Of a DNA stretch of 64,000 nucleotides, positions 10,062-46,737 are shown one piece after another. The position numbers and the translations under genes are program-made. The notes under the pieces were generated by a model, which was given only the letters and a program-made list of their open reading frames with translations, was not told the DNA's origin and searched no databases. Location: positions 62,001 through 126,000 of IMG/VR virus record IMGVR_UViG_3300022752_000015; one strand, written 5' to 3'. Within the stretch, counting starts at the first letter, position 1. Every line of letters starts with the position of its first letter.

Positions 10062-10064
10062 ATC

Positions 10065-11501: not shown

Positions 11502-11502
11502 T

Positions 11503-13674: not shown

Positions 13675-13679
13675 GATAA

Positions 13680-14219
13680 TTAAGTATCATGGTCAATTAC
13701 AATTTCATCATCATATGATAGCTCATCAGCTCTTTTAAGCCCATCTCGAGTATAAATCATCGTTCCTGGAGTTACGCACAGTTCTGTGTCATCATCAAAA
13801 ACAAATTTGATTACATCTTTTTCACCTACATCAACAATTGCGCTTATCACATCGCTTTCGACACAAAGAGTCTGTTCATTCATAGAAAACACGACATCAT
13901 TTATCTTCAAATCAAATACTTGCTTTTTTCCAGCAGGAGTTGAAATCAAACAATTTGAAGTAAAACAATCTACTGTTCCTGGAGAATTAAGAACAGTGAT
14001 ACCATATTTGGCAGCTAACCCAGATCTAGGTCTGACTTGGGCTTCAAATCCAGGAGGCAGTTCAATCTTTAACCCAGTCGCTACAGTAGCCCTTTGACCA
14101 GGTTTGATCATTAGGTACTCGTTAGCGTATACGTCGCACCCTGCTGATCCTTGAGTCTGATACTTAGGCACCAGATCATCGTCATCCACTTCACATCGAA
14201 TCCAGAATATATCACTCAT
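13680..14219 (-). CDS. dut: dUTPase N-extein (84 aa) fused to split-intein N-half (95 aa)
   Basis: AGCDV, RPRSG, GTVD then intein block [14 protein letters not shown] and block B-like [11 protein letters not shown]; stop at 13680; Cys1 at 13967. Confidence 0.93.
13681..13687 (-). promoter_or_regulatory. ATACTTA candidate promoter motif overlapping the IntN stop codon
   Basis: GAT ACT TAA (D-T-stop) contains the motif; the endonuclease ATG follows 6 nt later. Confidence 0.45.
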
Positions 14220-30500: not shown

Positions 30501-32722
30501 TTCTTTAAGAAAGGAACAATCACCACCTGCATGATCGCGGTCCCAGTGGCCTGGGCGAATGCTGTAGCAAATGCGCCGATGAATGCGAAGGACAGGTAGG
30601 CGCCAAGGATCTTAGTCCAATTTTCTTCTAGGTATTTCCCGATCGTGTTTCCGATGAAACCAAGGGCCTGCTCTCCGAGCTTGGCAAGCGGTTCCTTCAA
30701 CTTTTCGAACATTCGACCGAAGGCATCCGTGATTGGGCTCACTTCTCCCATGATTGCGTTGCCGACAGCAGAAGCCTGATCGTTGAATTTGCCTGACAAC
30801 ATATCAGTGAGAGAATTGAGTCCTGAAGACAGCATGTCTCCAATGTAGTCTATGGCGCTCGCGATGATCTTCTTCGCGGCCGTCCACATCTCGCCTAATC
30901 CGCTCAAGAAGCTCTGGCCTCCTGGACCTGACGCCGTCAAATAGTCTAAGAAGTTCTTCTTTAAGTTCTGGACCAGATCTCTGATCGTGACGGATCCACC
31001 TGTCTTAAGGATCTGAAAGAACTCCACAAAGCTCTTGGAAAAAGCCCTAAACAATCCACCGATCTTGTCTGGAGAGACCATGTCAGACAGACCTCCTAAC
31101 AGTTGCTTCAATCCTGGAATCACTTCCATCAGCTGCATTCCGAGGTCTCGCCCGGCCTGACGCACGACGTGGATGGACTTCATCAGGTTCATCATCAGAT
31201 TTCTGAAGGTGGCCGTTCTCTCCATTCCCTCCATCACGCCTTCGAAGAACACCTCGAAGAAGTTTTCTCCCTTTGGAGGTTCACCCGCCTTCACCACACG
31301 TTCGATGTCCTTCGACAACGCCTGCATCGCCTGTGCGGTGGACATCGTCTGCCCTTCAAGCCCGGCCGACGCCGCTGCGGCTCTATCCATGGAGATGCCA
31401 GCATTCTTGGTCGACAATGCCTGCCGAACAGCCGCCTCATCCATGTTGACTGACTGTGCGATGAGCTGCAACTCACGGCGGCTCATCTGATCTGCAGACT
31501 TGCCTGCGGCTGCGAAAGCCTGCTTGATCTGATCAAGAGCCTGATCAGGAGTCTCTGCCTCGAGCAACTTCATCGTGTCAAGGTTGATGCCGAAAGCCTG
31601 CGACAGCTTGGAGACGCTCTCTGCGGCTGACTCGAACGTGTTGAACGCATCAAGAACACCTGTGATGTCCTTCAACTCCAACCCCAACCCGTGAGCATAG
31701 GTCGTCGCCTTCGCAAGTTCCTTGACTGAAACGTTGGCAAAATGCTTCACATCCTTCATGGCGCGGCCCATGTCACGCGATATCATCTTGGAATCTAGGT
31801 TGAATTCCTTCGCCATTCCCTTCGCATACTTCGTGATCTCAGTCTCAATCTCGACGACGTCGCGGCCGCTCGACACGGCTGCATTCATCAGGCCTGCAAA
31901 TTCTTCCTTTGAGATGCCCAACCCCTTGGCCATCGCCAGAGCTTCCTTCGCGCTGTCCTTGAACTGAGCGGACAACTTCTGGAAGGCTGCAGGCGCCAAT
32001 GACGCCATCTCATTTGCGTATGACATGGCCTCTGCCAGGTTACCGAAGACGCGCATGGCGCTCAATCCAGGCACAATCATCCCTTGAGTGAGAGACTTGC
32101 CCATTCCGACGACGACGCCACCTAACCCAGATCCAATGTCGCCAAAGTTCTCTCTTATCTTCTCGAGCGCGGTCGCAAGCTCTGTCGACCCAGCCATCGC
32201 CGACTTTGCCTTGGAGAACAAGGCGTTGAACATCTTAATCGGACCCGTGAGAATCGCGACGCCGAGATCAAAGATGGTTCCTATTATGGTTGACAGTATA
32301 CCACCGAGGCCGCTCAACACGTTGTTCATCAACGAGATGCCAGCCTTGAAACCTTTTGCAGCCCCAGTGACCGCAGCGAGACTGACGGCAAACTTCGTGC
32401 TATTTTTGGCTGCCTTTTCCCATTCTTTGTTCAAGAGAGCAGTGAAATCGCTGAGAGATCTAATACCTTTTATCTCTTCGTTCAGCCGTTTTAGTCTTTC
32501 TTCCGCTTTCTTCTCTTCCTTGTCTCGTTGATCAGAGATTTCATCCAACAGGTCAGACAGATCGCTGCTGATCTCTGTCTGATCCTTGAGGCCCTTATTC
32601 GTCTTTAAGAGCTGTTGGGCAAGGGCAGCCATCGCGGCTGCCAACTGCTTCGTGGCTTCTACCTGTGCTGACAGATCAGGAGGGTTCGGCGGACCACCGG
32701 GTGGCGAAGGAGGAGGAGCCAT
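27533..32722 (-). CDS. Tail tape measure protein
   Basis: 1729 aa, Ala/Gly-rich helical with a central hydrophobic block; downstream of the tube and chaperone genes. Confidence 0.85.
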   Translation of the reverse strand: MAPPPSPPGGPPNPPDLSAQVEATKQLAAAMAALAQQLLKTNKGLKDQTEISSDLSDLLDEISDQRDKEEKKAEERLKRLNEEIKGIRSLSDFTALLNKEWEKAAKNSTKFAVSLAAVTGAAKGFKAGISLMNNVLSGLGGILSTIIGTIFDLGVAILTGPIKMFNALFSKAKSAMAGSTELATALEKIRENFGDIGSGLGGVVVGMGKSLTQGMIVPGLSAMRVFGNLAEAMSYANEMASLAPAAFQKLSAQFKDSAKEALAMAKGLGISKEEFAGLMNAAVSSGRDVVEIETEITKYAKGMAKEFNLDSKMISRDMGRAMKDVKHFANVSVKELAKATTYAHGLGLELKDITGVLDAFNTFESAAESVSKLSQAFGINLDTMKLLEAETPDQALDQIKQAFAAAGKSADQMSRRELQLIAQSVNMDEAAVRQALSTKNAGISMDRAAAASAGLEGQTMSTAQAMQALSKDIERVVKAGEPPKGENFFEVFFEGVMEGMERTATFRNLMMNLMKSIHVVRQAGRDLGMQLMEVIPGLKQLLGGLSDMVSPDKIGGLFRAFSKSFVEFFQILKTGGSVTIRDLVQNLKKNFLDYLTASGPGGQSFLSGLGEMWTAAKKIIASAIDYIGDMLSSGLNSLTDMLSGKFNDQASAVGNAIMGEVSPITDAFGRMFEKLKEPLAKLGEQALGFIGNTIGKYLEENWTKILGAYLSFAFIGAFATAFAQATGTAIMQVVIVPFLKKLAAQILGAAALNRAAQAAAEAGAGGAAAPFSLSAGSFAMMAFFIVAALAAVGLSIAAMRKFDVTTEEVMKAGIAVTAAGILMVTAGMAASSMAAVGAAAPALLSAIAGAFVMLPIVAGMLYVASSIVDLAKEAQEKHVTMSSILNILPVLGVTALLIAEAAIIAGALMAVGGAVTASGGTLAIAMAAGLLALGLIITAMIVTAGEIITRLATQNFEPTKLNAAVGVVEAVGNLFIKTIPIMGAIIGAIGVAALGPLSVAGFEVLTKIVDKIVDTSIDVIKRINKIDVGDASILKTKVEPFISIMKSIVEMINAIGGVLQSAGGGAISGIISSFTGKSPFDGAADLIENLIGNESDGTGIIGVLKVIKDSIEKLQAVPTATVAAFGTVIASVATLISSITGVIKSFSRTIKSEAFWGLAKEEKDLPNTFADNAVSIKTFIRTLLPSAKSLIKTIKENVTGIKPEEAQSVAAVAGGLGTVLGAVGTLMGSLSGALGNFRKTLDEEETKAGVSSTQTGISNSTKKIEEFDSVGFEKFMGAFTDKIKPLLDHVKEFMSGTFSSIKESIAGIDPKQFEGIKLIGEIITSVMGMATAMYSSLSKIDFGGVGGALSFATNQIVVKIPSAADMISSLAGAMPALVSSIGAAFDAFKPSPDFGKKVKSMKEAFETVSTILKSIGEILPDIKDAAGAKIPEDTIAKNLMTKVWAMVHLLQNMVKPPTEMMIKAGQDKSPMAALSAAIDALPPGPKADSIQKLKAFAESMTTLKSIADVMKSFEGAGGAEVPTGGGGGGFQGVLAAFGRTVARGSIAMKIAAMKSMLDSIGGEQGFKTLDEPIKNAASAINITSVTMLKDIQTNLGTYVEGFKVIPDSITKMSDTFKSELLTSSVSGLNESLTNFETEINKLASTRPHQIQAKLKATLGSLGIRGATYKIDAKPIALNLQLNVVMSAGDVANGIASASTIIRSRIQELAVRAGEPQGYDISQTISTPQK

Positions 32723-34361: not shown

Positions 34362-35285
34362 TTAGCTTGACAAAAATCTATGAGATTTTTCTGTCCATAT
34401 TTCAAATATGAAACCATTTTCGGTTGCAAATTTTTGAGCAGATTGAAATTTGGCGACATTTTTGTCATGAGTAACATGGCAATTTGGTTTAAATTCTACA
34501 ATACGTTTTGTTCCGTCTTTATACTCTATTAAACAATCAATGATGTAATGTCTAATTTTTCCTTCAAATGAATATTCGATGTTGTAAGGTTCAAACGTAT
34601 AAGAAATAACATCTTCGTTTGATTCTAAATGTAGAATCGCATTTAATTCGAATAATGACCTGTAATAAACATTAGGCTTAGATGATTTCTTAGAGTTATT
34701 GAAATATCCATGAACGCGAGTGCATTTAGTCAGCAATCCATTTTTTACTCTCTCAGCTTGCTCCAAGCTTTGACGTTCTCGATTGGTTTCTTTGCCCCAA
34801 TAAGATTTCATATGCTCTGAGATTTTTTGTTTATGAGATTCTGATTTTGATTTTCCTGTTAAAGATCTGGATATTTTTTCAGATCTTTCAGGAGTATTCA
34901 TCTTTTCAATGATTGATGCTATTCTTGGATCGTCCTTCGTTAATCCCTTGCACCATCCTTGAATTTCACCATTTTCCCACATTTTTCTTCTGGTTGTGAG
35001 ACTTTTCTTGAAGGCTTCTTTGTTGTGACCCCAATTATTGTTCACTTTCGAAGCATGACCCCATACAAACTTAGAGTATCCATTCACCAATCCGTTAAAT
35101 TTTGTATCGGAACCACACCCACATTCGCACGTTGGTTTAATTCCTTTTAGCACAACTTGAATGTATAAATCTTCGCTTGAAATATCATGTTTTTTTGAAG
35201 CATGAATTCTAAGGGAATTGATGCTTTCAATTTGAAAGTCGCATTGGGGACATTTAAGCATAAAACCTCTGCAGCTTGACGCCAC
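34362..35285 (-). CDS. Free-standing putative homing endonuclease (Zn finger, NUMOD-like repeats, TnsA-like PD-(D/E)XK)
   Basis: CPQC...HASKKH, CECGC, WCKGLTKDD, YRSLFE...EPY.I.Y...YIID...IVEFKP; AT-rich. Alternative start at ATG 35261. Confidence 0.8.
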   Translation of the reverse strand: MASSCRGFMLKCPQCDFQIESINSLRIHASKKHDISSEDLYIQVVLKGIKPTCECGCGSDTKFNGLVNGYSKFVWGHASKVNNNWGHNKEAFKKSLTTRRKMWENGEIQGWCKGLTKDDPRIASIIEKMNTPERSEKISRSLTGKSKSESHKQKISEHMKSYWGKETNRERQSLEQAERVKNGLLTKCTRVHGYFNNSKKSSKPNVYYRSLFELNAILHLESNEDVISYTFEPYNIEYSFEGKIRHYIIDCLIEYKDGTKRIVEFKPNCHVTHDKNVAKFQSAQKFATENGFIFEIWTEKSHRFLSS

Positions 35286-35329: not shown

Positions 35330-35818
35330 CTAGAACTGCAAAACGCAATTGTCGAAACGGAGAGTTAGTGATATTTCCGTTGGGTTTCCGTCCTCGTATG
35401 TGACCTCGTTGAAGTTAGCATCCGTGATGAATGCGCCTTTGATGTCCCAGAGTTCGATGACGGTGCCGACGGGGTCGAGCATCTTGAGTTGGATGTCACG
35501 CTTGTAGAAATCGGCGTAGCCGCTGCGACCTGAAACAGATTCGAAGTGGAGGCGGATCCATTCCATGACCTGTTGTGCGCCTGATGGCGCGATTGGGTCG
35601 TGGAGGGTGACGCCCATGGTGCTGAACGTCGTTTTGCCTGCGAGGTAGCGGGTTGAGTTGATGAACGGGACTGGGACTTCTTCTGTCGTGATTTGTGGAC
35701 GAGCCGCTGTCTTGATGATGTAGGCGTCGATGCCTTCAATCATGAGGACCCAGCGGTTCTTACGCTTTGGTTCAAACTTGTTTGGAATCATTGACGTGAC
35801 GTCAAGAGTTTCGGCCAT
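35330..35818 (-). CDS. Tail tube protein (T4 gp19-like)
   Basis: FEPKRKNRW, LHDPIAPSGAQQVMEW, YKRDIQLKMLDPVG, LRFDNC. Confidence 0.9.
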   Translation of the reverse strand: MAETLDVTSMIPNKFEPKRKNRWVLMIEGIDAYIIKTAARPQITTEEVPVPFINSTRYLAGKTTFSTMGVTLHDPIAPSGAQQVMEWIRLHFESVSGRSGYADFYKRDIQLKMLDPVGTVIELWDIKGAFITDANFNEVTYEDGNPTEISLTLRFDNCVLQF

Positions 35819-35848
35819 TGTAGAATTCTCCTGCTATTGGAACTAACA

Positions 35849-35855
35849 TAATTAT
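35849..35855 (-). promoter_or_regulatory. ATAATTA candidate late promoter motif
   Basis: About 30 nt upstream of the tube ATG. Confidence 0.45.
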
Positions 35856-35884
35856 TCACAAAAGATGATATAACAAAAAATATT

Positions 35885-38800
35885 TCAAATCTCGGACTGT
35901 AGACCGTTCGAGATGATGAAATCCAGTGAGACGAATTCAAGGGTCTTTGGGGGTTGGAGGTAGATTTTGCCCTTGAGCAAGTTATTTTCGACGTTTTGTC
36001 TAGATTTTAGGGGTGATTCTATGTTCACCTTGAAGGATTGGAGGCCGTTGCGGGCGCGGACGGACGACAGGTATTCTGTGATCTGTGAGGCGAAGACGGT
36101 TGACACTCTCTCTACGTTTGGTTCAAAGAGGAATTGTAGAGCAATTTGTCTGACGGCCTTGCGTACATCGATGAGCAGCCTGCGGACGGCTATTCTGTTT
36201 AGAGAAGATTCTGTCGATAGCAGCAGCGTCTTTTGACCCCAGATGACGACGCCTGACGTTTGGGCTGGGGATAGTTGTTTTATGTTTGTCGTCGCGTAGA
36301 GTGGATTTATGTTGTTGATGTACAGATTATCGATCGTGGGTTCGTCGAAGTTGATCACGGGCTGTAGGGCTGTGGTGAGACGACCTCGGGTCATGCCGGC
36401 GGGAGCGAACCATGGGGCTCCGACAGAGTCATTGAGCGAGATGGCGCCGAGGACGGCCACGGAGGGTGGAACGATTATCTCCTGATTGGGCAATTGATCA
36501 GGTGCAATTATCACGTCGGGGTAGTATGCGGCTGCATAGGATGAGTTCACACCGCGTTCTTTAAGAGCGGCAATGGTCAATGACGTTGAAGGTGCGTTGG
36601 CCTTGCCTAGAGCCGACATGGACATGGGATTTGAGCCTGAATCGTACTGTTCTATGTCCATGATATAAAGAGTGTCCATTCTTTCTTCCGCCGCCTGCAC
36701 GGCGACGTCGGTGATCACACGTTCTCTTATCCCGGGGATGGCCATGATGCCGATGTCTGCATTGACTGTGTTCTTGATGATGTCTATCGCTTTTCTGTAC
36801 GAGACCACAGCCGGACCATTCAACCCGCCTCGTGCAATGTCCTCCATGTCTCCTCTGACGGCGACGTCATTGATGGCAGCTTCATCAGAGTCGAAGATGT
36901 TGACCCCGTCGAATCCTCCTTGGAACATCACATTAAAGCTTAGATAGTCTCTGTTTTTCTTCAATAGAAGATCAGAGACGTTGATCCCTCGTGTCTTTGC
37001 GTCATCATCGACCGCAACGAAGCCACGACGAACATATTCTGCAGAGCCCCACTCGATGATTCCGCTGCTACCGGTCAACACCTTGACATTTTCTAAAGTG
37101 AATAGATTGTTACAGAACCTATCAGCATCCAGTATTCCATTTGTGGTAGAGTCGGGCGTTCCTTCATTGTCTCTCACGGAAAAGTTCAGAGTTGTCGTCG
37201 AGTGGTCAGGATAGTGAAGCGCAAAAGCGTTGAAAGATTTATTGAGATTTGAGTTTGGTAAATCGTTCGAGTCGAATGGACTTGAGTGAACGAATATAGG
37301 TCCCCAAGGCTTCTTCGTCGGGGGATCAGTGTTGTTGCCTGTTGCCTTGTTGTTTAGCCTCATTGGTAGAGGAGGAATCACGGAATTTCGCAGGTAGTAT
37401 TGATCGACCAGAGGTAGAATATCTGAGCCGCCCAACGGAGCTAGAGGAGCCGAGCCGGAAGTAACTATGTGAGAAATTCCTCTGGATCCCATTGGGATGG
37501 CCGCAGGATTCAGAGTAGCGTTATGAACCTCTTCGGATACTTCAACTCTAACGTATCTAGACTTTAAGGGATAGTTGCCTTCGATCACCATCCTTTGGTC
37601 GTCAGGGGGTCTGTCAAAATCGTAGTAGACATTTACATCTCCTATCACTTTGCAGATATAAGTGGCAGATGATGGATCCAACGTCAAGTCATTGAACGTT
37701 TCAAGCGGTTTAGAGTCTTCGTTATCTGGATCATCTATCAGTCTCACCGATAGGCTAAAAGATCCGTACTTGTATGGACTTCCTTCCGATTTTGGAAACA
37801 CATCATGAATCGTCACCTTGTAGCTGTTGGACACGTTCGCTCCTGCATCGAGCGCATGGAGCCTGAAAAGATTTTCGTGCTTTCCTAAAAGTTTTTGAGA
37901 AATTATCCAAGGTGTGGATGCATGAGTGAATCGATCTCTGAAAGATTCATAGTTTGGAACCGTCGTCGATCCAACGTTTCTAGGCAACGAAGACGTGATC
38001 AAGAAGACTGATCTCTCAGTGTCTAGTATTCTATTTGAATCTGAAACCACGTCGGCGCCAGCAGATACGACTCCCGTACCAGTCACGACAGCGTGAGAGG
38101 GGTAGATGTCCCAATGAGCTGCAAGGTAGTGACCTTTTTCTTGTATCAATGAAGCCGTGAGATTGAATACGTTCGATATGTAGTTGGTGGAGAACATATC
38201 GAAGGAAGCCGTGATGAAATTAGGAGCTGAGGTCGTGCCTTTGTGACCATTCATCAGCAGAACGAACTCCTGCGACGGCGTTTGATCTTTTCTAAGCGCG
38301 ATGGAACCCAAAGTCGTACCATGCGCCGTCGATTCATCAGCTACAAAGTTAGATAAAGGAGCTGATGAGTCATATCCTCCTCCTGATGAAGATAACCGTA
38401 AGATCACCCCCGAAGGTGCCATCAAAACGCCTCTGATGATGGGGACGGCTCCCGCCGTTATCCCATTAACGCTGCCTGTTCCTTGCAACCCAGCCGAACT
38501 GAACACGACTGAACCTGCAGACTCTGACATGAAGCATCCCAAAAAGTAAGTCCTGCCCAGAGGACCATTGAGATTTGCGTATGGATTGGACCCTAACGAG
38601 CTAGAGTTGACAGGTTGTTCTTCTCCGACGGTGAAACCTGCGTTGGTGACCTCGCCAGACGTCAGACGTTTATTTCCGTCGCCTGCTCCGAGGATGCGAA
38701 TGTAGGTGATAGAGTTTGCATTTCTCATCCACTCTGCGACCGCAAGGGGACCAAACTTTTTGCCGTCGATGGTCCCAAACTTGTCGATAAAATCAGTGAG

Positions 38801-38950
38801 AGATCCTAACGTAAAAGGAACGAAAGCGGGACCGTTATTTGAAGTTCCAATGACGCCAGCCGAAAGACCACTCGGTTGGGTCTTGACAGGACCAATCGTC
38901 CCGATCTCTTGTGCTGATATTCCTGCGCTTGAAAATTCGAATTTAGCCAT
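35885..38950 (-). CDS. Tail sheath protein, paralog 3
   Basis: GVIGTS..GPAFVP, FQGGFDG, PWFAPAG, IWGQKTL, VRRLL, FEPN, FVSLDF. Confidence 0.9.
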   Translation of the reverse strand: MAKFEFSSAGISAQEIGTIGPVKTQPSGLSAGVIGTSNNGPAFVPFTLGSLTDFIDKFGTIDGKKFGPLAVAEWMRNANSITYIRILGAGDGNKRLTSGEVTNAGFTVGEEQPVNSSSLGSNPYANLNGPLGRTYFLGCFMSESAGSVVFSSAGLQGTGSVNGITAGAVPIIRGVLMAPSGVILRLSSSGGGYDSSAPLSNFVADESTAHGTTLGSIALRKDQTPSQEFVLLMNGHKGTTSAPNFITASFDMFSTNYISNVFNLTASLIQEKGHYLAAHWDIYPSHAVVTGTGVVSAGADVVSDSNRILDTERSVFLITSSLPRNVGSTTVPNYESFRDRFTHASTPWIISQKLLGKHENLFRLHALDAGANVSNSYKVTIHDVFPKSEGSPYKYGSFSLSVRLIDDPDNEDSKPLETFNDLTLDPSSATYICKVIGDVNVYYDFDRPPDDQRMVIEGNYPLKSRYVRVEVSEEVHNATLNPAAIPMGSRGISHIVTSGSAPLAPLGGSDILPLVDQYYLRNSVIPPLPMRLNNKATGNNTDPPTKKPWGPIFVHSSPFDSNDLPNSNLNKSFNAFALHYPDHSTTTLNFSVRDNEGTPDSTTNGILDADRFCNNLFTLENVKVLTGSSGIIEWGSAEYVRRGFVAVDDDAKTRGINVSDLLLKKNRDYLSFNVMFQGGFDGVNIFDSDEAAINDVAVRGDMEDIARGGLNGPAVVSYRKAIDIIKNTVNADIGIMAIPGIRERVITDVAVQAAEERMDTLYIMDIEQYDSGSNPMSMSALGKANAPSTSLTIAALKERGVNSSYAAAYYPDVIIAPDQLPNQEIIVPPSVAVLGAISLNDSVGAPWFAPAGMTRGRLTTALQPVINFDEPTIDNLYINNINPLYATTNIKQLSPAQTSGVVIWGQKTLLLSTESSLNRIAVRRLLIDVRKAVRQIALQFLFEPNVERVSTVFASQITEYLSSVRARNGLQSFKVNIESPLKSRQNVENNLLKGKIYLQPPKTLEFVSLDFIISNGLQSEI

Positions 38951-38970
38951 CTATATCGCTCTACGTTCCA

Positions 38971-38977
38971 TAACTAT
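38971..38977 (-). promoter_or_regulatory. ATAGTTA candidate late promoter motif
   Basis: 20 nt upstream of sheath 3. Confidence 0.45.
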
Positions 38978-38986
38978 AATCCTGCT

Positions 38987-39079
38987 TCAGACATCTGACA
39001 TGTAAGAATCATCATCAGATGTCATGGGAATATTTTGCAATATGTCCTTGATTGTTTTACCACGTGCAATTGTTGACAT
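38987..39079 (-). CDS. Possible 30-aa small protein
   Basis: MSTIARGKTIKDILQNIPMTSDDDSYMSDV*, preceded by GAGG; lies between the terminator and sheath 3. Confidence 0.35.
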   Translation of the reverse strand: MSTIARGKTIKDILQNIPMTSDDDSYMSDV

Positions 39080-39096
39080 TAATTAATGCCCTCGAC

Positions 39097-39130
39097 AAAA
39101 AAGAAACCGCCCCGTTAAAAGAGGCGGTTC
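39097..39130 (-). terminator. Intrinsic terminator after sheath 2
   Basis: AACCGCC/GGCGGTT stem followed by a T-run on the minus strand. Confidence 0.75.
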
Positions 39131-39152
39131 CTGTCTGTTTTGACAGAGGTTA

Positions 39153-42100
39153 TCAGGTCACTGACTGCAGGTTATTTGCAACGACGAAGTCGAGTGAGAC
39201 GAATTCGATTGTCTTTGTTGGCTGCAGGAATATCTTACCTCTGACCGTGTTGTTCTCGACGTCGGCCTGTGTGGTCGTAGAAGAATCGATGATGACTCTG
39301 AAACGATCGAGACCGGCGAGGGCTTGGATTCTCTGAAGTCTTGGCGTGACAGCCGCAGAGAATCTTGCGAGGGTTGCTTCGCGGTTGGGTTCGAAGATGA
39401 TCGTCTGAGCAATCTCGCGAACCTGACGACGAACGTCGATGAGGAGACGGCGGACGTTGATTCTGTCAAGGGCAGAAGCAGCTTGCAGCATCGTCTTTTG
39501 ACCCCAAACAACCACTCCTCCGCGAGGGTTCAATCCGCCTTGTGCATTTACAATTTGAGCGTACAAGGGGTTGATGTCCTCATCATAAAGCGCATCCAAG
39601 TCCTGATCCTTGAGCTGTATGCTTGTCTCAAGTGTCGTGGGTAGAGCGCCGCGGGTCTGACCTGCTGGGGCGAACCAAGGATATCCTAATGAGTCATTCA
39701 AGGCTAGAGCTCCGAGGACCACAACCGAAGGTGGAACGACCACTGTGTTCGATTGTTTTGAAGGATCTCTCATTAGAACGTCAGGGAAGTAAGCTGCCGC
39801 GAAGGACGTGTTGAGGTTACGCGCCTTATGCTGTAGGATCGTTTCCGTGACTGAAGGTTTGACTACTCCTGTGATATCGATCAGGTTTCCGTCCTTGTCT
39901 ACCTGCTCCATGTCCATGATGTATAGAGCGTCAAAACGTTCTTCAGTCGCCGCGATGGCAGCATCAGTGACGACAGGCGTTCTGATGCCTGGTATCGCAA
40001 GGAGTTGAATGTCTACATTGGTAGTGTTCTTCATGACCTCAAGGGCCTTGAGATAAGCTGATACGTTGGGGCCCTTTTCGCGACCGCGATCAGCATCATT
40101 CATGTCTGCTGTGACAGCAGCATTGTTGATCTGGTGCTCATCTTCATCAAAGATATTGACACCATCAAATCCACCCTGCATGATCAAAGAGAACTTGAGG
40201 AATCTTCTGTTCAATGAGAATGATAGATCATCTACCTTCACAGCCCTTGTTTTGTTGCCACTGTCAGGTTGGATGTCACCATTTCTGACATAGGTTGCAT
40301 ACTTCCAATCATCTGCCTGTTCCACGGTGCCGTTCGAGCCTGTCTTGATCTGCACATGCTCTAGAGAGAACAAGTTGTTGCAGAACTTGTCAGAATCGAC
40401 GATTCCATTCTCGGCAGTTGCTGCTGCTCCTGCGTTGTCTCCAACGACAAAGTTCATGAATGCCGTTGAGAAGCCGGGGAAGTACTGAGTAAAGCTGTTG
40501 AAAGATTTATCTGGCGTTACATTGCTATTTTGATCATTCACGTCTACGACGTGTTCAAACTTTGCTCCCCAGTAATATCTAGCGTTTTCTTGTGCCTGCG
40601 CTCCGACGCCATCAAAGATGTTTTTTCTGAATGGAAGAGGTGGTTCAACCACATTGCGAATCAAAGTACCTGTGATAAGAGCTGCGTCGTCGACAGTGAA
40701 GGTTGCTGAACCTGATGTCATGAGATGAGCGATGCCTCTGAAACCCATCGGCAAGGCTGTCGCGTCAACAGCCAGATCGATCACTTCATCTGACACTTCA
40801 ACTCTGACATATCTTGATCGCAACGTATAGTTGCCTTCAATCACTAGCTTTTGGCTTGCATCATCTCTATCAAAGTCATAATATGCGTTTATGTCTCCCA
40901 TCACCTTCCCGATGTAACGATCGGAAGATGGATCAAGGTTGACTCCGTTGAAGCTCTCTAACACCTTCGGTTCAATGTCTGTGTCATCCATGCGACGTAG
41001 AACTACGTTGAATGAACCGTACTTGTAATTGGCTGCATTTGAAGGAGTGATGTTGGCAATTCCAATCTTGACCTTGTTAGAGATGTTGGCTCCAGAGTCT
41101 AGAGCATGGAATCTGAACAAGTTAACTGGCTTTCCACCAAATTTTTGAGAGATAATCCAAGGAGTCTTAGCGTTAGAGAATCTATCACGGAAAGATTCAT
41201 AATTGGGTACAGTCTGCGATCCTGAATTTCTTGTCAAGGATGAAGTTAACAAGAAGACAGAATTCTCCGTACCAAGAACGTGCGATTGATTTGTACCTGC
41301 AGTCGGAGACAGATAACCAGAAGCTATTGGTAAGAATCCAGTTCCTGTAATGACAGCCAACGAAGGGTGTATATCCCAACTTGCGGCAAGATAATGGCCA
41401 GCTTGCTGTATCTTGTAAGGATCTGTGTTGAAAACCTTAGATATGTGATTCGCTGAATTGACGTCAAAAGACGCTGTCAAAACGTTAGGATAAGCAACGT
41501 CTGTTCCTTTATGTCCGTAAAGCAACATCGTGAACTCTTGCTTGGAAGGTGAAAGAACGATGGTTCCTACTGAAGCTCCAAACAGGTTTGCGGGTTTTGC
41601 AGGTGTTGTAGAACCAGGAGCAAGGGATGTAACATAACTTGCCGACAAACGCAGGACGACTCCTGAAGGAGCCATCAACACGCCTCTGACGATTGGAACT
41701 GAAGCTGTCAAGCTAGAAGGAGAGTTGACTCTTTTTGCTCCTTGCAACCCAGCATCACTTAAGAAAGTTGATCCTGCCGACTCCGACATGAAACATCCTA
41801 AGAAGTATGTTCTGCCTAGTTCCCCGTGTGAAACTGCATATGGATTTGGTGATAAAGTTCCGTCTTCTGCAGGTTGTTCTTCGCCTACGACGAATCCTGC
41901 ATTATTAACTTCACCAGCCGTCATTCCTGTTTTAAGACGTTGCTTTCCATCGCCAACGCCTAAGACTCTAAGGTAAGTCACTGAGGTTGAACGGCTTAAC
42001 CATTCAGAAACAGCTATCGGTCCAAACTTCTTAGAATCGCTCTCACCGAACTTCGCAAAGAAGTCTTTAAGCGTTCCATAAGTAAGTGGTACGAATGCTG

Positions 42101-42221
42101 GTCCTTTTAACGATGTGCCGATGACCCCCGCGGGGACCCCCGTCGGTCCTGTTTCGACGGGGCCCGTTAGGTCTATTTCTCTTGTTGTTACTCCTGCGCT
42201 TCCAAATTTGAGCTGTGCCAT
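39153..42221 (-). CDS. Tail sheath protein, paralog 2
   Basis: REIDL, GPAFVP, MQGGFDG, PWFAPAG, WGQKT, RINVRRLL, IFEPN. Confidence 0.92.
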   Translation of the reverse strand: MAQLKFGSAGVTTREIDLTGPVETGPTGVPAGVIGTSLKGPAFVPLTYGTLKDFFAKFGESDSKKFGPIAVSEWLSRSTSVTYLRVLGVGDGKQRLKTGMTAGEVNNAGFVVGEEQPAEDGTLSPNPYAVSHGELGRTYFLGCFMSESAGSTFLSDAGLQGAKRVNSPSSLTASVPIVRGVLMAPSGVVLRLSASYVTSLAPGSTTPAKPANLFGASVGTIVLSPSKQEFTMLLYGHKGTDVAYPNVLTASFDVNSANHISKVFNTDPYKIQQAGHYLAASWDIHPSLAVITGTGFLPIASGYLSPTAGTNQSHVLGTENSVFLLTSSLTRNSGSQTVPNYESFRDRFSNAKTPWIISQKFGGKPVNLFRFHALDSGANISNKVKIGIANITPSNAANYKYGSFNVVLRRMDDTDIEPKVLESFNGVNLDPSSDRYIGKVMGDINAYYDFDRDDASQKLVIEGNYTLRSRYVRVEVSDEVIDLAVDATALPMGFRGIAHLMTSGSATFTVDDAALITGTLIRNVVEPPLPFRKNIFDGVGAQAQENARYYWGAKFEHVVDVNDQNSNVTPDKSFNSFTQYFPGFSTAFMNFVVGDNAGAAATAENGIVDSDKFCNNLFSLEHVQIKTGSNGTVEQADDWKYATYVRNGDIQPDSGNKTRAVKVDDLSFSLNRRFLKFSLIMQGGFDGVNIFDEDEHQINNAAVTADMNDADRGREKGPNVSAYLKALEVMKNTTNVDIQLLAIPGIRTPVVTDAAIAATEERFDALYIMDMEQVDKDGNLIDITGVVKPSVTETILQHKARNLNTSFAAAYFPDVLMRDPSKQSNTVVVPPSVVVLGALALNDSLGYPWFAPAGQTRGALPTTLETSIQLKDQDLDALYDEDINPLYAQIVNAQGGLNPRGGVVVWGQKTMLQAASALDRINVRRLLIDVRRQVREIAQTIIFEPNREATLARFSAAVTPRLQRIQALAGLDRFRVIIDSSTTTQADVENNTVRGKIFLQPTKTIEFVSLDFVVANNLQSVT

Positions 42222-42247
42222 TTATATCGCTCCTACGCTTTGCATGA

Positions 42248-42254
42248 TAAGTAT
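42248..42254 (-). promoter_or_regulatory. ATACTTA candidate late promoter motif
   Basis: 26 nt upstream of sheath 2. Confidence 0.45.
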
Positions 42255-42273
42255 AAGATTCCCGACGTTTGCA

Positions 42274-45200
42274 TCAGACAAATTCGACGCCGGCGTTTGT
42301 TACGATGAAATCGATTGCAATAAATTCAATTGCTCTCGTTGGGACGACGACGATTCGACCATTCAAACGATTGAGATCGATGTCCTCTTGTGTGTTATTA
42401 GTCTCATTCATGATGACCTGATAAGCCTCAATGCCTGCCTGGGTCTGAATAAGGCTGAGTTGAAGAATTGCATCAGCCACAAACTTATTTCTGACGGCTG
42501 GTGTGTTCTGTTCGAATATGATTCTGTTAGCTATGTTGATGATTAATCTCTTAACCTCTAAGAGCAAACGTCTCACATTGACTCTATCAAGAGCAGACTT
42601 TCTTATTTGTAATGTCTTTTGTCCATAGATAACGAATCCCAATCTTGGGAATGTCGCTATAGGATTGATTCTAGCATCATATAGACGATCTCTATCCGAG
42701 ACGTTCAATCTGACCTCTACGTTGTTCACGAAATCAAGCGCGGCTCGGTTGAATCCTGCAGGCGCAAACCAAGGATATGCAATAAAGTCGTTGAACCCTA
42801 ATGCACCGAGAGCTGCAACAGATGCAGGAACTTTCACGTATCTGCTGTTCGTCGTGTCGTTGACGTAGACGTTGGGGAAGTAGGTCGCGACGTAGTTGTT
42901 ATCGAACGTTCTTTCTTCGAAGATAGCTGCTGTATTTTCGATGTTGATTCTGTTCGTAGAATCATCATAGATTCTATCACTGTTGTCATCATAGTTTGGT
43001 ATGTCCATGACGTACATGGCCAGCCCATAATCTCTTACTTTCTTTGCTGTATAATTAGTGAGGTAATCCTCACGAATACCTGGCAGAGCAAGTAGATTTA
43101 CGTTAACCTGTAGAGGATCGGTCATTACATCGATTGCTGTGACGTAAGAACTAACTGCGTTGTTATCAACTCCAGTTCCAGCCACGTTAGAAGTGAGACC
43201 CGGTGATGTGTATGTGGTCGAAGCTGCTCCCTTAGGTGTCTCAAACGAAGTTGCTTTATCATTCATTCGGCGAGCTGCTGGATCTAGGATATTCAAACCG
43301 TCGAATCCGCCGTACATGAATGTTGAGAACTTAGCAAACGTTGAGAATCTATTGAATTGATAAGGTTCACCATTAGACAACAAGCTTGCAAGAGTAATTC
43401 TGTTTCCAAATCCTGAATCATTTATGACATAAGTTGATGGATCGACTTTGCCGTTTCTGATGTAAGCAGCTTCTCTCATATGAGATCTGATCGTACCTGT
43501 TAACTCAGAGATAGCTCCGTTAGCGAATGCTACCTTAGAGAGGCTGAACTTATTGTTGTTAAACGTGTCTGCACCAGAACCTGTCACTAAAACGTCGAGT
43601 TTTTTAATACCCATGAACTTTGTGAAGTTTTCAATGAGAACGTTCTTTTCTTCGTTCAAATTGTTATTAAGCGGGTCGGTGTTTCTTTCAAACTTTACAC
43701 CCCAGTAGTAGGCTGGATTTGCTGACTCAAGAGGACCTGGTTCACCACTCCAGTTAGCAGTTGTGCTAACTGCTCCTCTTGTTACTTTGTATCTGTAAGG
43801 TACAGGAGGAAGTATAGATCCTGATAACATTGATGCGCTATTATTATCGTTAAAAGCCCCTCCTATTCTTATTCTTGATGACGTTGGCGCTGCATCGTTG
43901 AGGCTATCATTCGTCTTTAGGACCTCAAATCCTCTGAATCCGAACGGAAGAGATTTTGCGGGAACCTTTTTTTCTTCAACGGCAGTTGACATCACTACTC
44001 TGACGTACTTGGAAACATTCTGATATTTTCCAGTAGTCACGATACGTCTCTCGACAAGTATGTCTTGATCGAAATCATAAGTTACTTTGCGGTCGCCAAC
44101 TAGTTTTGCAACGTAATTGTCTGCATCAGGATCCAAAGAACAATTTACAAATTCTTCTATTATTACTGGATTTACGTCCGTATCATTGAAATCACGAATT
44201 TGTAAATTGAACGTTCCGTATTCATAAGCATCATTTTCAGAAACCTTCAGATTACTTATTGAAACCTTGTAAAGGCTGTTTGCATATTCTCCATCGTCGA
44301 TAGACTCTATAGAGAACAAATCATATTCAGACGTTCCGAATGGTTGCGAGATGAAGTAAGGAGTGCGAGGAGCTGTAAATCTTGTGTCGAATGAACCATA
44401 TGCTCCGCTGAAGTAAAGAGTAGTGTCACCAGAAGTATTGCTCCTAAGGCTTGACCCCGACAAGATGGCAACAGCGTCATTATCTATGACGGAAGCGACT
44501 TCATCATCAACCGCAAAATCAGCATATAATAAATGCTGATATTGAGCAAATTTTTCAGGATCTTTGTTCAACACTTTTCCGAAATAATCAGCGCTTGTTG
44601 GATTAAGCGATGCCGTGTAGATTTTCAATCCTGCTTTTCCATCGTCATAAGAAAACGTTGATCCTAAAGTGGAGGAAATAACAAGCTTTACTTTCCCACT
44701 TTTCACGGCACCGACGTCGTCTATAGCAACCGGACTGTTGAACGTAGTTCCTACGTTTTCGTCTCCATCTAAAATAAGCATTCTAGCACCAGATGCCATG
44801 AGAACGACTCCGCGGACCAACGATACGTTACTAGACTGAGTTCTCGAATCGTTGTCCGTGAACATCGGCATACCTTTTGGTTCTTCGCTAGAATCTATCG
44901 TGTGATCTGCTACTATAAATTGCACGCCACCGACAGTTCTAGAATAGAGATCTACTGTAGAGTCGGTCTTTATACCGATCGTCTTAAATCCAGCATTCTT
45001 TACCTTGCCAGTTACAAGAGTCGTTTGAACGTCACTTAAAGAGCGATTGGAACCTCCTCCGAGGACACGCATGTACGTCAACGCTGTTCTATTTTTCAAA
45101 AACTCATTGACAGCATAAGGACCAAACTTTTTTGGATCTAGATCGCCAAAAATGCTTGCAAATTCATTAAAGTTAGAAACAGTAACTGGTACGAAAGCTG

Positions 45201-45321
45201 GTCCTTTTTTGGAAGTACCAATCACACCTGCAGGAACTCCGACGGGTCCTGACGGAGGTGGTGCCTTAAGCTCAATTTCTCTTTCAAAAAAATTAGGTGA
45301 TCTAAAAACTTGTTCAGCCAT
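42274..45321 (-). CDS. Tail sheath protein, paralog 1
   Basis: REIEL, GPAFVP, MYGGFDG, PWFAPAGFNR, YGQKTL, RVNVRRLL, IFEQN. Confidence 0.92.
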   Translation of the reverse strand: MAEQVFRSPNFFEREIELKAPPPSGPVGVPAGVIGTSKKGPAFVPVTVSNFNEFASIFGDLDPKKFGPYAVNEFLKNRTALTYMRVLGGGSNRSLSDVQTTLVTGKVKNAGFKTIGIKTDSTVDLYSRTVGGVQFIVADHTIDSSEEPKGMPMFTDNDSRTQSSNVSLVRGVVLMASGARMLILDGDENVGTTFNSPVAIDDVGAVKSGKVKLVISSTLGSTFSYDDGKAGLKIYTASLNPTSADYFGKVLNKDPEKFAQYQHLLYADFAVDDEVASVIDNDAVAILSGSSLRSNTSGDTTLYFSGAYGSFDTRFTAPRTPYFISQPFGTSEYDLFSIESIDDGEYANSLYKVSISNLKVSENDAYEYGTFNLQIRDFNDTDVNPVIIEEFVNCSLDPDADNYVAKLVGDRKVTYDFDQDILVERRIVTTGKYQNVSKYVRVVMSTAVEEKKVPAKSLPFGFRGFEVLKTNDSLNDAAPTSSRIRIGGAFNDNNSASMLSGSILPPVPYRYKVTRGAVSTTANWSGEPGPLESANPAYYWGVKFERNTDPLNNNLNEEKNVLIENFTKFMGIKKLDVLVTGSGADTFNNNKFSLSKVAFANGAISELTGTIRSHMREAAYIRNGKVDPSTYVINDSGFGNRITLASLLSNGEPYQFNRFSTFAKFSTFMYGGFDGLNILDPAARRMNDKATSFETPKGAASTTYTSPGLTSNVAGTGVDNNAVSSYVTAIDVMTDPLQVNVNLLALPGIREDYLTNYTAKKVRDYGLAMYVMDIPNYDDNSDRIYDDSTNRINIENTAAIFEERTFDNNYVATYFPNVYVNDTTNSRYVKVPASVAALGALGFNDFIAYPWFAPAGFNRAALDFVNNVEVRLNVSDRDRLYDARINPIATFPRLGFVIYGQKTLQIRKSALDRVNVRRLLLEVKRLIINIANRIIFEQNTPAVRNKFVADAILQLSLIQTQAGIEAYQVIMNETNNTQEDIDLNRLNGRIVVVPTRAIEFIAIDFIVTNAGVEFV

Positions 45322-45361
45322 TCTCCTGCTCCTTCATGAATACACTGGGAATTTCTTCGTA

Positions 45362-45368
45362 TAAGTAT
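45362..45368 (-). promoter_or_regulatory. ATACTTA candidate late promoter motif
   Basis: 40 nt upstream of sheath 1. Confidence 0.45.
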
Positions 45369-45396: not shown

Positions 45397-46737
45397 TCAC
45401 TTAGTAGTTTCGTATGTTAAATCGCCTAGTAGCGTGTCAGCCGCTGCAGGATTAGATTTTGAAGAAAGATCGCTTGACGGTTTTATGACAGTTTCGCCGG
45501 ACGCATTAGATGTTCTAAAAACCCTAGCGTAAGTCGCTACATTTTTACCTGAAGAGTTTTGAGTAATTATTTTTTGGTACACTGGTCTATTTTGTTTAGA
45601 CGACCTGGTCTGTAATGCAGGATCATTTGAGACGGCCGAGTCCGTCGGCGAATACAGTCTAGTGCCGCTTCTGCGTTGATCTGCTCTATTGTTTTTGATG
45701 TCAGACAGCGGAAGCGTTGGATCATCAGATCCAAGAAAAGGATCTTCGACCAAATTGATAGGAGACGCGGGATCATCGTCTTTCGGAGCAACGGTTTCAA
45801 ATTTTATGATTGGAGATGAAACATAACGTTTTATTGGAACTCCGGTTCCGGGAGATTGTGTGGCAAATAAGTAAGCGAGAACCTTCACGTTAAATTTGTA
45901 TTTGATAATTCTCTCTTCTTGTGACATGTCATCGACGTTATTTTCAGGTTCGTATGAATTATCTTCAACCTTGGCTATGAACCAATATCCTTTGGTCGTG
46001 TTAAGCTTCCAAGAATTGCCTTGTGGTAAAAAAGAAGCAACAATATTTTCTAAAATCTGATTCATGTGTTGCGTGTATTGAGTCCACAGAGTAATCTCGT
46101 AACGAATGTTATAAAATTGAGGAGCAGGAATGACTATGGTCTCATAGATATTTTTTTTCTTGATATCTGCAAGCCAAGCTCCATCTATTATGGCTGATGA
46201 TTCTTCATCTTCTCCCACGGTTCTGTCGGTCAAGATCTGACCATCAACATGTTCCTTGTTAGGATTAGTCGCTACATTCAGCTGGTTTTTTAATAAAAAT
46301 CGATTAATAAGATTTTGATATTTTCTATCGGATTTATCAAGACGTCTTTTTATGATGATTTCGCCGGTTTGTTGATTTATACCTCTGCCGGCGATATCTT
46401 CGTCTGAATTTTGGGAAATTCCCGTCCTGACGATAGTGATCAAAGGAAGTATCAAAGAATTGTTTCTATCTCTTAAGGCTTTTCTCTTCTTCAAGATTGC
46501 CCATTTTTCTCCCGACGCAAAGATAACAGGGACATTTTTTGGTACTGAATTGTCACCATTAACTTGCAACGTCAACTCTTTGTCGAACAAATTAAAAATC
46601 GAAACATCAACGTCTTCCAATCCGACAGGAGGGATCGTAAATTCAGCCGTTCCTTGGTGCGTTTTATCGATTAAACCTGGTACACCGAACTGAGGATTGC
46701 TGTTGGAGTTAAATCTGGTAGGCATAGTTCTGCTCAT
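45397..46737 (-). CDS. Tail sheath stabiliser/terminator (T4 gp15-like)
   Basis: VPVIFASGEKW...LILPLITI...YEITLWTQYTQHMNQILE; lies between neck and sheath genes. Confidence 0.7.
   Translation of the reverse strand: MSRTMPTRFNSNSNPQFGVPGLIDKTHQGTAEFTIPPVGLEDVDVSIFNLFDKELTLQVNGDNSVPKNVPVIFASGEKWAILKKRKALRDRNNSLILPLITIVRTGISQNSDEDIAGRGINQQTGEIIIKRRLDKSDRKYQNLINRFLLKNQLNVATNPNKEHVDGQILTDRTVGEDEESSAIIDGAWLADIKKKNIYETIVIPAPQFYNIRYEITLWTQYTQHMNQILENIVASFLPQGNSWKLNTTKGYWFIAKVEDNSYEPENNVDDMSQEERIIKYKFNVKVLAYLFATQSPGTGVPIKRYVSSPIIKFETVAPKDDDPASPINLVEDPFLGSDDPTLPLSDIKNNRADQRRSGTRLYSPTDSAVSNDPALQTRSSKQNRPVYQKIITQNSSGKNVATYARVFRTSNASGETVIKPSSDLSSKSNPAAADTLLGDLTYETTK

What the first reader, a model, noticed from the sequence alone, without database searches (positions are those of the whole stretch)
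35885..45321. Three full-length tandem tail sheath paralogs with a single tube gene
Seen: 1015, 1022 and 1021 aa, all keeping GPAFVP, GGFDG, WFAPAG, GQKT and VRRLL. Paralogs 2 and 3 are closer: both have LGRTYFLGCFMSESAGS and near-identical 5' flanks (CGTAGGAGCGATATAAATG vs CGTAGAGCGATATAGATG). Each has its own ATA[CG]TTA motif, and a terminator separates 2 from 3. Known: T4 has one 659-aa gp18. Inference: a heteropolymeric or position-specific sheath (baseplate-proximal, shaft, neck-proximal), or alternative tail types with set stoichiometry.
Basis: partly seen in the sequence, partly recalled or inferred. Interest (0 to 1): 0.65.

Follow-up and report, generated by a model that had tools for sequence, protein, structure and literature searches.

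The report
Three-gene tail sheath in a huge phage
An uncultured large phage, and at least 26 related metagenomic contigs, carry three intact tail-sheath genes in a row: two are old, strongly constrained and look strongly expressed, and the third is a younger, fast-evolving copy that looks weakly translated, which points to a multi-part contractile sheath so far documented only as a two-protein sheath in phage PaBG and a three-protein sheath in bacterial injection systems.

Summary
Three minus-strand ORFs (S1 42274-45321, S2 39153-42221, S3 35885-38950; 1015, 1022 and 1021 aa) are gp18-type sheath proteins. They sit between a gp15-like tail terminator and the only tube gene found in the 212.8-kb record. 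The array is not an artefact: 26 related IMG/VR loci hold all three classes in the same order, and every locus lacking one ends at a contig edge.

A sister clade has only two sheath genes, an S1-like and an S2/S3-like copy. So the S1 versus S2/S3 split is old, and S3 is a later duplicate of S2 inserted before the tube gene.

All three are under purifying selection (dN/dS 0.03-0.08 for S1 and S2, 0.05-0.20 for S3). S3 differs from the other two in four ways:
- The N-terminal and C-terminal parts I treat as the lattice-forming core evolve about 5-60 times faster.
- It lies behind a terminator that is conserved in nearly all relatives.
- Its promoter-like motif is ATAGTTAT instead of ATACTTAT.
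- None of its 15 distinct leaders has a GGAG ribosome-binding site, whereas all S1 and S2 leaders do.

Best reading: S1 and S2 are the major subunits and S3 is a low-copy specialised one, possibly a terminal ring. The arrangement in the virion is untested. This is a new variant of a known kind.

The parts
45397..46737 (-). gp15-like tail terminator / sheath stabiliser (446 aa), directly upstream of S1
   Evidence: Pfam T4-gp15_tss 49 bits against a cut-off of 25; phrog_227. It holds the same position in the two-sheath sister clade.
45361..45368 (-). ATACTTAT promoter-like motif before S1, about 40 nt upstream of the ATG
   Evidence: AATACTTATA is kept in all but one of the 19 distinct S1 leaders of relatives (L027 has AATAATTATA), although the surrounding spacer has diverged. 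ATACTTAT occurs only 4 times in the 212.8-kb record.
42274..45321 (-). S1, sheath paralog 1 (1015 aa, P0001); the old lineage
   Evidence: phrog_23 E 5.6e-52. AF2 model pLDDT 74.5, top Foldseek match T4 gp18 at E 6.9e-18. dN/dS 0.03-0.07. GGAG ribosome-binding site in 13 of 13 leaders.
42247..42254 (-). ATACTTAT promoter-like motif before S2, about 26 nt upstream of the ATG
   Evidence: ATACTTA is conserved in 17 of 18 distinct S2 leaders (L024 has ATATTTA). The S1-S2 spacer is 52-61 nt where measured, and the window's has no terminator-like site.
39153..42221 (-). S2, sheath paralog 2 (1022 aa, P0002)
   Evidence: phrog_23 E 3e-51. AF2 model pLDDT 77, pTM 0.83, top Foldseek match T4 gp18 at E 3.9e-19. 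dN/dS 0.035-0.08. GGAG in 15 of 15 leaders.
39102..39132 (-). Intrinsic terminator between S2 and S3
   Evidence: 12-bp stem with 7 G-C pairs, followed by a T run. A strong hairpin (-13 to -25 kcal/mol), in most cases followed directly by a T-rich tail, occurs in the S2-S3 spacer of all 15 relatives examined, with different stem sequences.
38970..38977 (-). ATAGTTAT promoter-like motif before S3 (G variant), about 20 nt upstream of the ATG
   Evidence: ATAGTTAT is present in all 20 distinct S3 leaders of relatives.
35885..38950 (-). S3, sheath paralog 3 (1021 aa, P0003); a younger duplicate of S2 that evolves fast
   Evidence: phrog_23 E 3.6e-40. Sister to S2 with 100 SH-aLRT support. dN/dS 0.05-0.20, with core dN about 5-60 times that of S1 and S2. 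No GGAG in 0 of 15 leaders; median anti-SD pairing -1.8 kcal/mol.
35848..35855 (-). ATAATTAT promoter-like motif before the tube gene
   Evidence: AATA[ACT]TTA(T) is conserved about 30-40 nt upstream of the tube ATG in relatives, followed by AGGAG or TAGGAG.
35330..35818 (-). Tail tube protein (162 aa), the only tube homologue found in the record
   Evidence: phrog_4542 E 1.5e-30. Single match in the 212.8-kb record. 88-100% identical across the three-sheath clade.

Best explanation
The three genes encode three functional, non-equivalent subunits of one contractile tail sheath. S1 and S2 are an old pair, inherited from an ancestor that already had a two-gene sheath. They probably co-assemble as the major subunits of the sheath trunk, in the way the two sheath proteins of PaBG are both virion components. 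S3 is a later tandem duplicate of S2, inserted between S2 and the tube gene. It keeps the sheath fold, both exchange arms and the hallmark motifs. It is transcribed separately, translated weakly and far less constrained. I infer that it is a low-copy, position-specific subunit, for example one or a few rings at one end of the sheath, comparable in logic to the Pvc4 initiator ring of PVC. Shown here: homology, fold, synteny, order of duplication, selection, and conserved expression signals. Inferred: presence in the virion, co-assembly, relative abundance and position.
For: All three match the tail-sheath PHROG (E 1e-40 to 1e-52). The S1 and S2 models match T4 gp18 best. The gene order is gp15-like, S1, S2, S3, tube. 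26 related loci hold all three classes and there is no counter-example. The tree splits S1 plus the sister clade's first copy from the sister clade's second copy plus (S2, S3), with 98-100 SH-aLRT support under two models. The sister clade's order is gp15-like, S1-like, S2/3-like, tube. For the same genome pairs, dN/dS is 0.03-0.08 for S1 and S2 with nearly equal dN, and 0.05-0.20 for S3. The N- and C-terminal parts I treat as the core are the best-conserved parts of S1 and S2 (0.86-0.99 pairwise identity in most 40-residue blocks) but the least conserved parts of S3 (0.43-0.58). Core dN in S3 is about 5-60 times higher, yet the tube is 88-100% conserved. S3 still keeps the family's invariant residues, the net charge of its C-terminal helices and the pattern of its arms. 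Expression signals differ consistently: GGAG in 13/13 S1 and 15/15 S2 leaders but 0/15 S3 leaders, a hairpin terminator in the S2-S3 spacer of nearly all relatives, and the motif ATAGTTAT instead of ATACTTAT. Precedents: both PaBG sheath proteins are virion bands (PMC7412058); PVC has a Pvc4 initiator ring followed by alternating Pvc2 and Pvc3 layers (PMC12546770).
Against: A weak Shine-Dalgarno sequence and a terminator are only indirect measures of abundance. Fast evolution of S3 could instead mean it has left the lattice, or that divergent alleles are exchanged by recombination: dS for S3 is also higher than for S1 and S2 in most pairs. Comparison with partner proteins did not show which end S3 might occupy. 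gp25-like is 58-73% identical and gp15-like 64-94%, both intermediate rates.
Confidence: 0.55

Rival explanations
1. S3 has left the sheath lattice. It is a sheath-derived protein with a new role, for example an accessory tail or neck structure, an assembly factor, or a decoy for a host defence that senses tail proteins. The real sheath is then S1 plus S2.
For: The N- and C-terminal regions taken here as the lattice and tube-contact parts are the fastest-evolving parts of S3, while the tube and the S1 and S2 cores are nearly frozen. dN/dS of the S3 N-terminal arm reaches 0.4-0.6. S3 has a separate transcription unit and a weak ribosome-binding site.
Against: S3 keeps all 53 family-invariant residues, both arms, the positive charge of the helices and the full domain set at about 1000 aa. 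It always sits between S2 and the tube gene. No other fold or domain was gained.
Confidence: 0.15
2. All three are equivalent trunk subunits laid down in a fixed repeating pattern, as mixed rings or as strictly alternating S1, S2 and S3 layers, at similar molar amounts.
For: All three are full-length, conserved as a set, and each has its own promoter-like motif. PVC shows alternating layers of two paralogs.
Against: Subunits in equivalent lattice positions should be under similar constraint and expressed at similar levels. S3's core dN is about 5-60 times higher, and it lacks the GGAG that every S1 and S2 leader has.
Confidence: 0.12
3. The paralogs are alternatives: different virions, or different infection conditions, use different sheath proteins.
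For: S3 has a separate promoter-like variant and a terminator, so it could be regulated separately. S3 alleles are deeply diverged between co-occurring relatives.
Against: No invertible or switch element was seen. There is only one tube gene, one gp15-like gene and one gp25-like gene in the record. S1 and S2 are tightly linked, with a 52-61 nt spacer and no terminator seen in the window's.
Confidence: 0.08
4. Only one paralog is functional, and the others are decaying duplicates or assembly artefacts.
For: None beyond the faster rate of S3.
Against: ORFs are intact in every relative with enough sequence even though dS is saturated. dN/dS is 0.03-0.20. Upstream motifs are conserved. The array recurs in contigs from many separate samples.
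Confidence: 0.03

Closest known systems
Two-component tail sheath of jumbo Pseudomonas phage PaBG (gp76 and gp213; Lu11 group)
   Same: It is a phage with more than one sheath paralog that arose by gene duplication, and both proteins are detected as virion bands (PMC7412058). tblastn also finds two sheath places in the PaBG and Lu11 records.
   Different: PaBG has two paralogs of about 58 kDa that are not adjacent in the genome (gp76 and gp213). Here there are three tandem paralogs of about 1000 aa. PaBG matches only the C-terminal 28% of S2, at 30% identity, so a shared duplication seems unlikely, though I did not test this. No fast-evolving third copy is described for PaBG.
Extracellular contractile injection systems: PVC (Pvc2, Pvc3, Pvc4) and AFP
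   Same: PVC has three sheath paralogs in one gene cluster with fixed positions: a Pvc4 initiator ring, then alternating Pvc2 and Pvc3 layers, all linked by strand-exchange 'handshakes' (PMC12546770). PVC and AFP sheath chains are among the structural matches to the core domain.
   Different: These are bacterial tailocin-like particles with subunits of 350-420 aa and several tube paralogs. Here the element is a virus with subunits of about 1000 aa and a single tube homologue. Identity is only 17-24% over roughly 300 aligned columns. The positions of S1, S2 and S3 are unknown.
T4 gp18 single-protein sheath
   Same: T4 gp18 is the best structural match for both models (E 3.9e-19 and 6.9e-18). 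The synteny is T4-like: gp15-like, sheath, gp19-like tube.
   Different: T4 has one sheath gene of 659 aa. Here there are three, each about 350 aa longer, and sequence identity to gp18 is about 12%.
Two-sheath relatives: the IMG/VR sister clade (L052-L058) and huge phage LR756508.1
   Same: Both have tandem sheath pairs next to the tube gene. The sister clade's two copies are orthologous to S1 and to the S2/S3 ancestor.
   Different: They lack the third copy. How the two LR756508.1 copies relate to the S1 versus S2/S3 split is unresolved because of long branches.

Membership tests
Contractile tail sheath protein (T4 gp18 type; Pfam PF04984/PF17482, phrog_23) | Sequence match to the family profiles | tested here: met
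   phrog_23 at E 5.6e-52, 3e-51 and 3.6e-40. Pfam Phage_sheath_1 and Phage_sheath_1C hit all three, but below the gathering scores (17.7-26.7 bits against cut-offs of 26.9 and 31.4).
Contractile tail sheath protein (T4 gp18 type; Pfam PF04984/PF17482, phrog_23) | gp18-like fold with a conserved N- plus C-terminal core and inserted outer domains | tested here: met
   AF2 models of S2 (pTM 0.83) and S1 (pTM 0.80) have T4 gp18 chains of 9mkb as the top Foldseek match. S3 was not modelled, but it is 52% identical to S2 over its full length.
Contractile tail sheath protein (T4 gp18 type; Pfam PF04984/PF17482, phrog_23) | Gene neighbourhood: next to the tube gene and the tail terminator | tested here: met
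   gp15-like 45397-46737 and tube 35330-35818.
Contractile tail sheath protein (T4 gp18 type; Pfam PF04984/PF17482, phrog_23) | Polymerises around the tube and contracts | not testable with these tools
   This needs purified tails or recombinant polysheath assembly.
Multi-component sheath with position-specific paralogs (PVC/AFP type) | Three or more sheath paralogs encoded in one tail cluster | tested here: met
   Three tandem paralogs, conserved in 26 related loci.
Multi-component sheath with position-specific paralogs (PVC/AFP type) | One paralog restricted to an initiator ring, and the others arranged in ordered layers | not testable with these tools
   There are only indirect hints for S3: a weak ribosome-binding site, its own transcription unit and relaxed constraint on the core.
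Multi-component sheath with position-specific paralogs (PVC/AFP type) | All paralogs keep the N- and C-terminal strand-exchange arms | tested here: met
   The arm patterns are retained in all three groups, though they are highly variable in S3.
PaBG-type two-component phage sheath | Both paralogs are present in the virion | not testable with these tools
PaBG-type two-component phage sheath | Descent from the same duplication as PaBG gp76 and gp213 | not tested
   PaBG aligns only over the C-terminal 28% of S2 at 30% identity. No joint tree was built.

The most novel reading that the evidence does not exclude
This clade of large uncultured phages builds the first three-protein contractile sheath seen in a virus. 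S1 and S2 would be ordered in the trunk, and a single hypervariable S3 ring would sit at one end. That ring would couple the frozen tube and sheath engine to fast-evolving baseplate or neck parts, acting as an evolvable adaptor ring that arose independently of the Pvc4/Afp4 initiator rings of injection systems.
Probability: 0.3. Interest if true: 0.7.

Novelty: new variant of a known kind. Interest (0 to 1): 0.55.

Why it matters
Sheath proteins are treated as single-copy phage markers and as homopolymers in models of contraction. Here a whole clade of large phages has kept two, and then three, distinct sheath genes under selection over deep divergence. Multi-protein sheaths may therefore be a recurring solution in big myoviruses, not an oddity of PaBG. 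The contrast within one array is a natural experiment on which parts of a contractile lattice can vary: two subunits with nearly frozen cores, and one whose core changes many times faster around an almost invariant tube. The finding also warns that sheath-based phylogenies and copy counts in metagenomes can mix paralogs.

Tried and rejected
- **Phage isolates.** A nucleotide search of the phage collection found nothing. The closest isolate hits are only 31-34% identical over part of the protein, so no cultured relative or annotation could be used.
- **Literature.** Searches for three or multiple tail-sheath paralogs in phages returned only PaBG (two proteins) and eCIS papers. The phrases 'three sheath' in the phiKp24 paper and 'both tail sheath proteins' in the Atu_ph07 paper do not refer to sheath paralog arrays.
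- **The 7-mer motif.** ATA[CG]TTA is not enriched in the window, and ATANTTAT is too rare across the record to define a regulon. The case for a promoter rests only on conservation of its position in relatives.
- **Locating S3 by partner rates.** Comparing its rate with candidate partners (gp25-like, gp15-like, hub) gave intermediate rates for all of them and no decision.
- **Careful mixture-model tree.** It did not finish in time. The quick mixture tree agrees with the LG tree on the main splits but leaves the LR756508 copies unresolved.
- **Large protein searches.** Not used, because no claim here depends on the absence of relatives.
Full report
**Source and observation.** The window is bases 62001-126000 of a 212,804-bp IMG/VR virus record, which CheckV estimates to be 59% complete. 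The record comes from JGI sample 3300022752.

| Name | Coordinates | Length |
|---|---|---|
| S1 | 42274-45321 | 1015 aa |
| S2 | 39153-42221 | 1022 aa |
| S3 | 35885-38950 | 1021 aa |

All the quoted peptide motifs are present, and the 17-residue LGRTYF...SAGS block is shared only by S2 and S3. Full-length BLASTP identities are S1/S2 33%, S2/S3 52% and S1/S3 29%. The 5' flanks, the ATA[CG]TTA motifs and the terminator at 39132-39102 are all real.

**What the proteins are.** All three hit the tail-sheath PHROG phrog_23 at E 1e-40 to 1e-52. Their Pfam sheath hits fall below the gathering scores. AlphaFold2 models built on a 55-sequence alignment gave pTM 0.83 for S2 and 0.80 for S1. For both models the best Foldseek matches are T4 gp18 chains (E 3.9e-19 and 6.9e-18). 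Other phage sheaths follow, and the core domain matches PVC, AFP, pyocin and Streptomyces CIS sheaths.

I read the models as a disordered N-terminal arm (about residues 1-30) and a core made of the N-terminal ~90 plus the C-terminal ~350 residues. Roughly 570 residues of outer domains are inserted between those two parts. This division is my reading of the models and of the gp18-type architecture; it is not a solved structure.

The gene order is T4-like. An Ad2-like neck gene is followed by a gp15-like terminator (Pfam T4-gp15_tss, 49 bits), then S1, S2, S3 and the tube. After the tube come a TnsA-like endonuclease, a T4_baseplate-family protein and a 1729-aa tape-measure-like protein. Only one tube homologue is found in the record.

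**The array is real and conserved.** A scan of IMG/VR returned 56 related loci. In loci L004-L050 (S2 identity 67-95%), 26 carry all three classes in the order S1-S2-S3, and 15 of those have all three at full length. Every locus that lacks a class ends within 524 nt of the last sheath ORF, so there is no counter-example. This rules out an assembly artefact.

**History of the duplications.** A more distant clade (L052-L058, 37-41% identical to S2) has two tandem sheath genes between its gp15-like gene and its tube gene. The trees are an LG+G4 tree of 88 rows and a C20 mixture tree of 27 rows. Both group the first copy of that clade with S1 (100 SH-aLRT). Both group its second copy with S2+S3 (98-99), and S2 with S3 (100).

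The S1 versus S2/S3 duplication therefore predates the split of the two clades. S3 is either a later duplicate of S2 inserted before the tube gene, or a copy that the sister clade has lost. In the window's lineage S3 still carries a decayed copy of the S2 leader. Huge phage LR756508.1 also has two tandem sheath genes, but their relation to this split is unresolved. Microcystis phage Mel-JY01 has one sheath gene.

**Selection.** I computed Nei-Gojobori estimates on the same genome pairs for all three genes:
- S1: dN/dS 0.03-0.07.
- S2: dN/dS 0.035-0.08, with dN nearly equal to that of S1 in each pair.
- S3: dN/dS 0.05-0.20, with dN 3-10 times higher than S1 or S2 in most pairs. The closest pair (window against L005, L041 or L037) is the exception: there S3 is the most conserved of the three (98% identity).

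**The pattern along the protein is the main new finding.**
- In S1 and S2 the N- and C-terminal core is the most conserved part. Within-group pairwise identity is 0.86-0.99 in most 40-residue blocks (lowest 0.81), against 0.60-0.85 in the outer domains.
- In S3 this is inverted: the core blocks are at 0.43-0.58, while several outer blocks reach 0.74-0.79.
- By region, core dN in S3 is about 5-60 times that of S1 and S2 across the divergent genome pairs. For L015 against L022, C-terminal core dN is 0.248 in S3, 0.004 in S1 and 0.009 in S2. dN/dS of the S3 N-terminal part reaches 0.4-0.6.
- Meanwhile the tube is 88-100% identical across the three-sheath clade.
- S3 still keeps all 53 family-invariant residues, both terminal arm patterns and the +5 net charge of the two long C-terminal helices. 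It therefore still looks like a subunit able to polymerise, but one that tolerates many more substitutions.

**Expression signals, read by conservation across relatives.** An ATANTTAT motif sits 20-40 nt upstream of the ATG of S1, S2, S3 and the tube gene in the window and in nearly every relative, while the surrounding spacers have diverged. It is ATACTTAT before S1 and S2 (with two exceptions), always ATAGTTAT before S3, and AATA[ACT]TTAT in most tube leaders. I infer a phage late-promoter element. The motif is not enriched in the window overall and is rare across the record.

The other signals separate S3 from S1 and S2:

| Feature | S1 | S2 | S3 |
|---|---|---|---|
| Distinct leaders with GGAG | 13 of 13 | 15 of 15 | 0 of 15 |
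| Median anti-SD pairing energy (kcal/mol) | -8.0 | -6.5 | -1.8 |
| Upstream spacer | - | 52-61 nt after S1; the window's has no terminator-like site | 138-203 nt after S2, with a strong hairpin (-13 to -25 kcal/mol), mostly T-tailed, in all 15 relatives examined |

The hairpin stems differ in sequence between relatives. S3 is thus a separate unit with weak translation signals, whereas S1 and S2 are linked and have strong signals. Low expression would also fit its fast rate, given the general rule that highly expressed proteins evolve slowly.

**Interpretation.** S1 and S2 behave as an old, equally constrained pair with matching strong expression signals. The natural reading is that both are major subunits of the trunk, as in PaBG, where the two duplicated sheath proteins are both virion bands (PMC7412058). 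S3 behaves as a minor, specialised sheath subunit.

The nearest mechanistic model is PVC. There, Pvc4 forms only the initiator ring on the baseplate and contacts a different tube paralog, and Pvc2 and Pvc3 then alternate in layers (PMC12546770).

I could not decide which end S3 would occupy. The gp25-like sheath-adaptor candidate (outside the window, G000 132850-133122) is 58-73% identical in the pairs tested, and the gp15-like protein is 64-94%. Both rates are intermediate.

The main rival is that S3 has left the lattice for a new role. Equal-stoichiometry layering, alternative tails and decay are each less likely, for the reasons given under rival explanations.

**Limits.**
- There are no expression or proteome data.
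- dS is near saturation for many pairs and differs among the three genes, which points to recombination. Rate contrasts therefore partly reflect the age of the alleles.
- The record is incomplete, so 'a single tube gene' holds only for the 212.8 kb in hand.

**Novelty.** Multi-protein sheaths are known: two proteins in PaBG and three in PVC and AFP. Full-text searches found no phage described with three sheath paralogs, and no isolate in the phage collection is closer than about 34% identity. I rate this a new variant of a known kind, of moderate to good interest.

Noticed in passing
window 34362-35285 (- strand): A 307-aa ORF with a TnsA-like endonuclease domain and low GC (0.34, against 0.52 in its neighbours) sits between the tube gene and the baseplate gene. 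It is present in the close relative L041 but has no counterpart at this place in L015. It looks like a mobile endonuclease insertion.
   Followed up: partly
L015 16332-18011 (- strand); the same gap occurs in L020, L022 and L025: In another branch of the clade, a 560-aa ORF on the opposite strand fills a 1.8-kb gap between S3 and the tube gene. Its function was not examined; it may be another mobile insertion at the same hotspot.
   Followed up: no
window 27533-32722 (- strand): A 1729-aa protein has only a weak tape-measure hit (phrog_305, E 8e-7). If it is the tape measure, at about 1.5 Å per residue (a rule of thumb from my own knowledge) the tail would be roughly 260 nm long. It evolves fast: 69% identity to L041, where its neighbours are 97-100%.
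   Followed up: partly
window 35330-45321, compared with L005 and L041: The module is a recombination mosaic. Between the window and L005, dS is 2.57 in the S1 outer domains but 0.26-0.28 in the S1 core, and 0.02-0.25 in S3. GC3 rises stepwise along the module: S1 0.38, S2 0.46, S3 0.52, tube 0.67.
   Followed up: partly
window 38990-39023 (- strand); S3 leaders of L011-L046: A 9-bp inverted repeat (GACATCTGA ... TCAGATGTC) lies just upstream of the S3 motif in the window. Many relatives instead carry a second ATAGAT-like element 13-15 nt upstream of ATAGTTAT. This may be a regulator site or a tandem promoter.
   Followed up: no
window 49055-49843 and 50302-51261 (- strand): An endolysin-like ORF and a 319-aa protein with collagen-like tail-fibre matches lie inside the neck and tail module, upstream of the sheath genes.
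   Followed up: no
window 17760-18986 (- strand): A 408-aa ORF matches only the C-terminal part of a DNA polymerase profile (phrog_17 positions 921-1204 of 1445). It lies directly after the large structural genes and may be a split or partial polymerase gene.
   Followed up: no
L060 (LR756508.1) 7807-10296 and 11305-13785: A 484-kb uncultured huge phage also has two sheath paralogs (830 and 827 aa), about 1 kb apart. Its tube gene lies some 7 kb further downstream.
   Followed up: partly
JGI sample 3300022752 (window record, L015, L026): The same metagenome yields the window's 212.8-kb record and a second, 187-kb relative. That relative is 77% identical in S1, 73% in S2 and about 51% in S3, so divergent members of the clade co-occur.
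   Followed up: no
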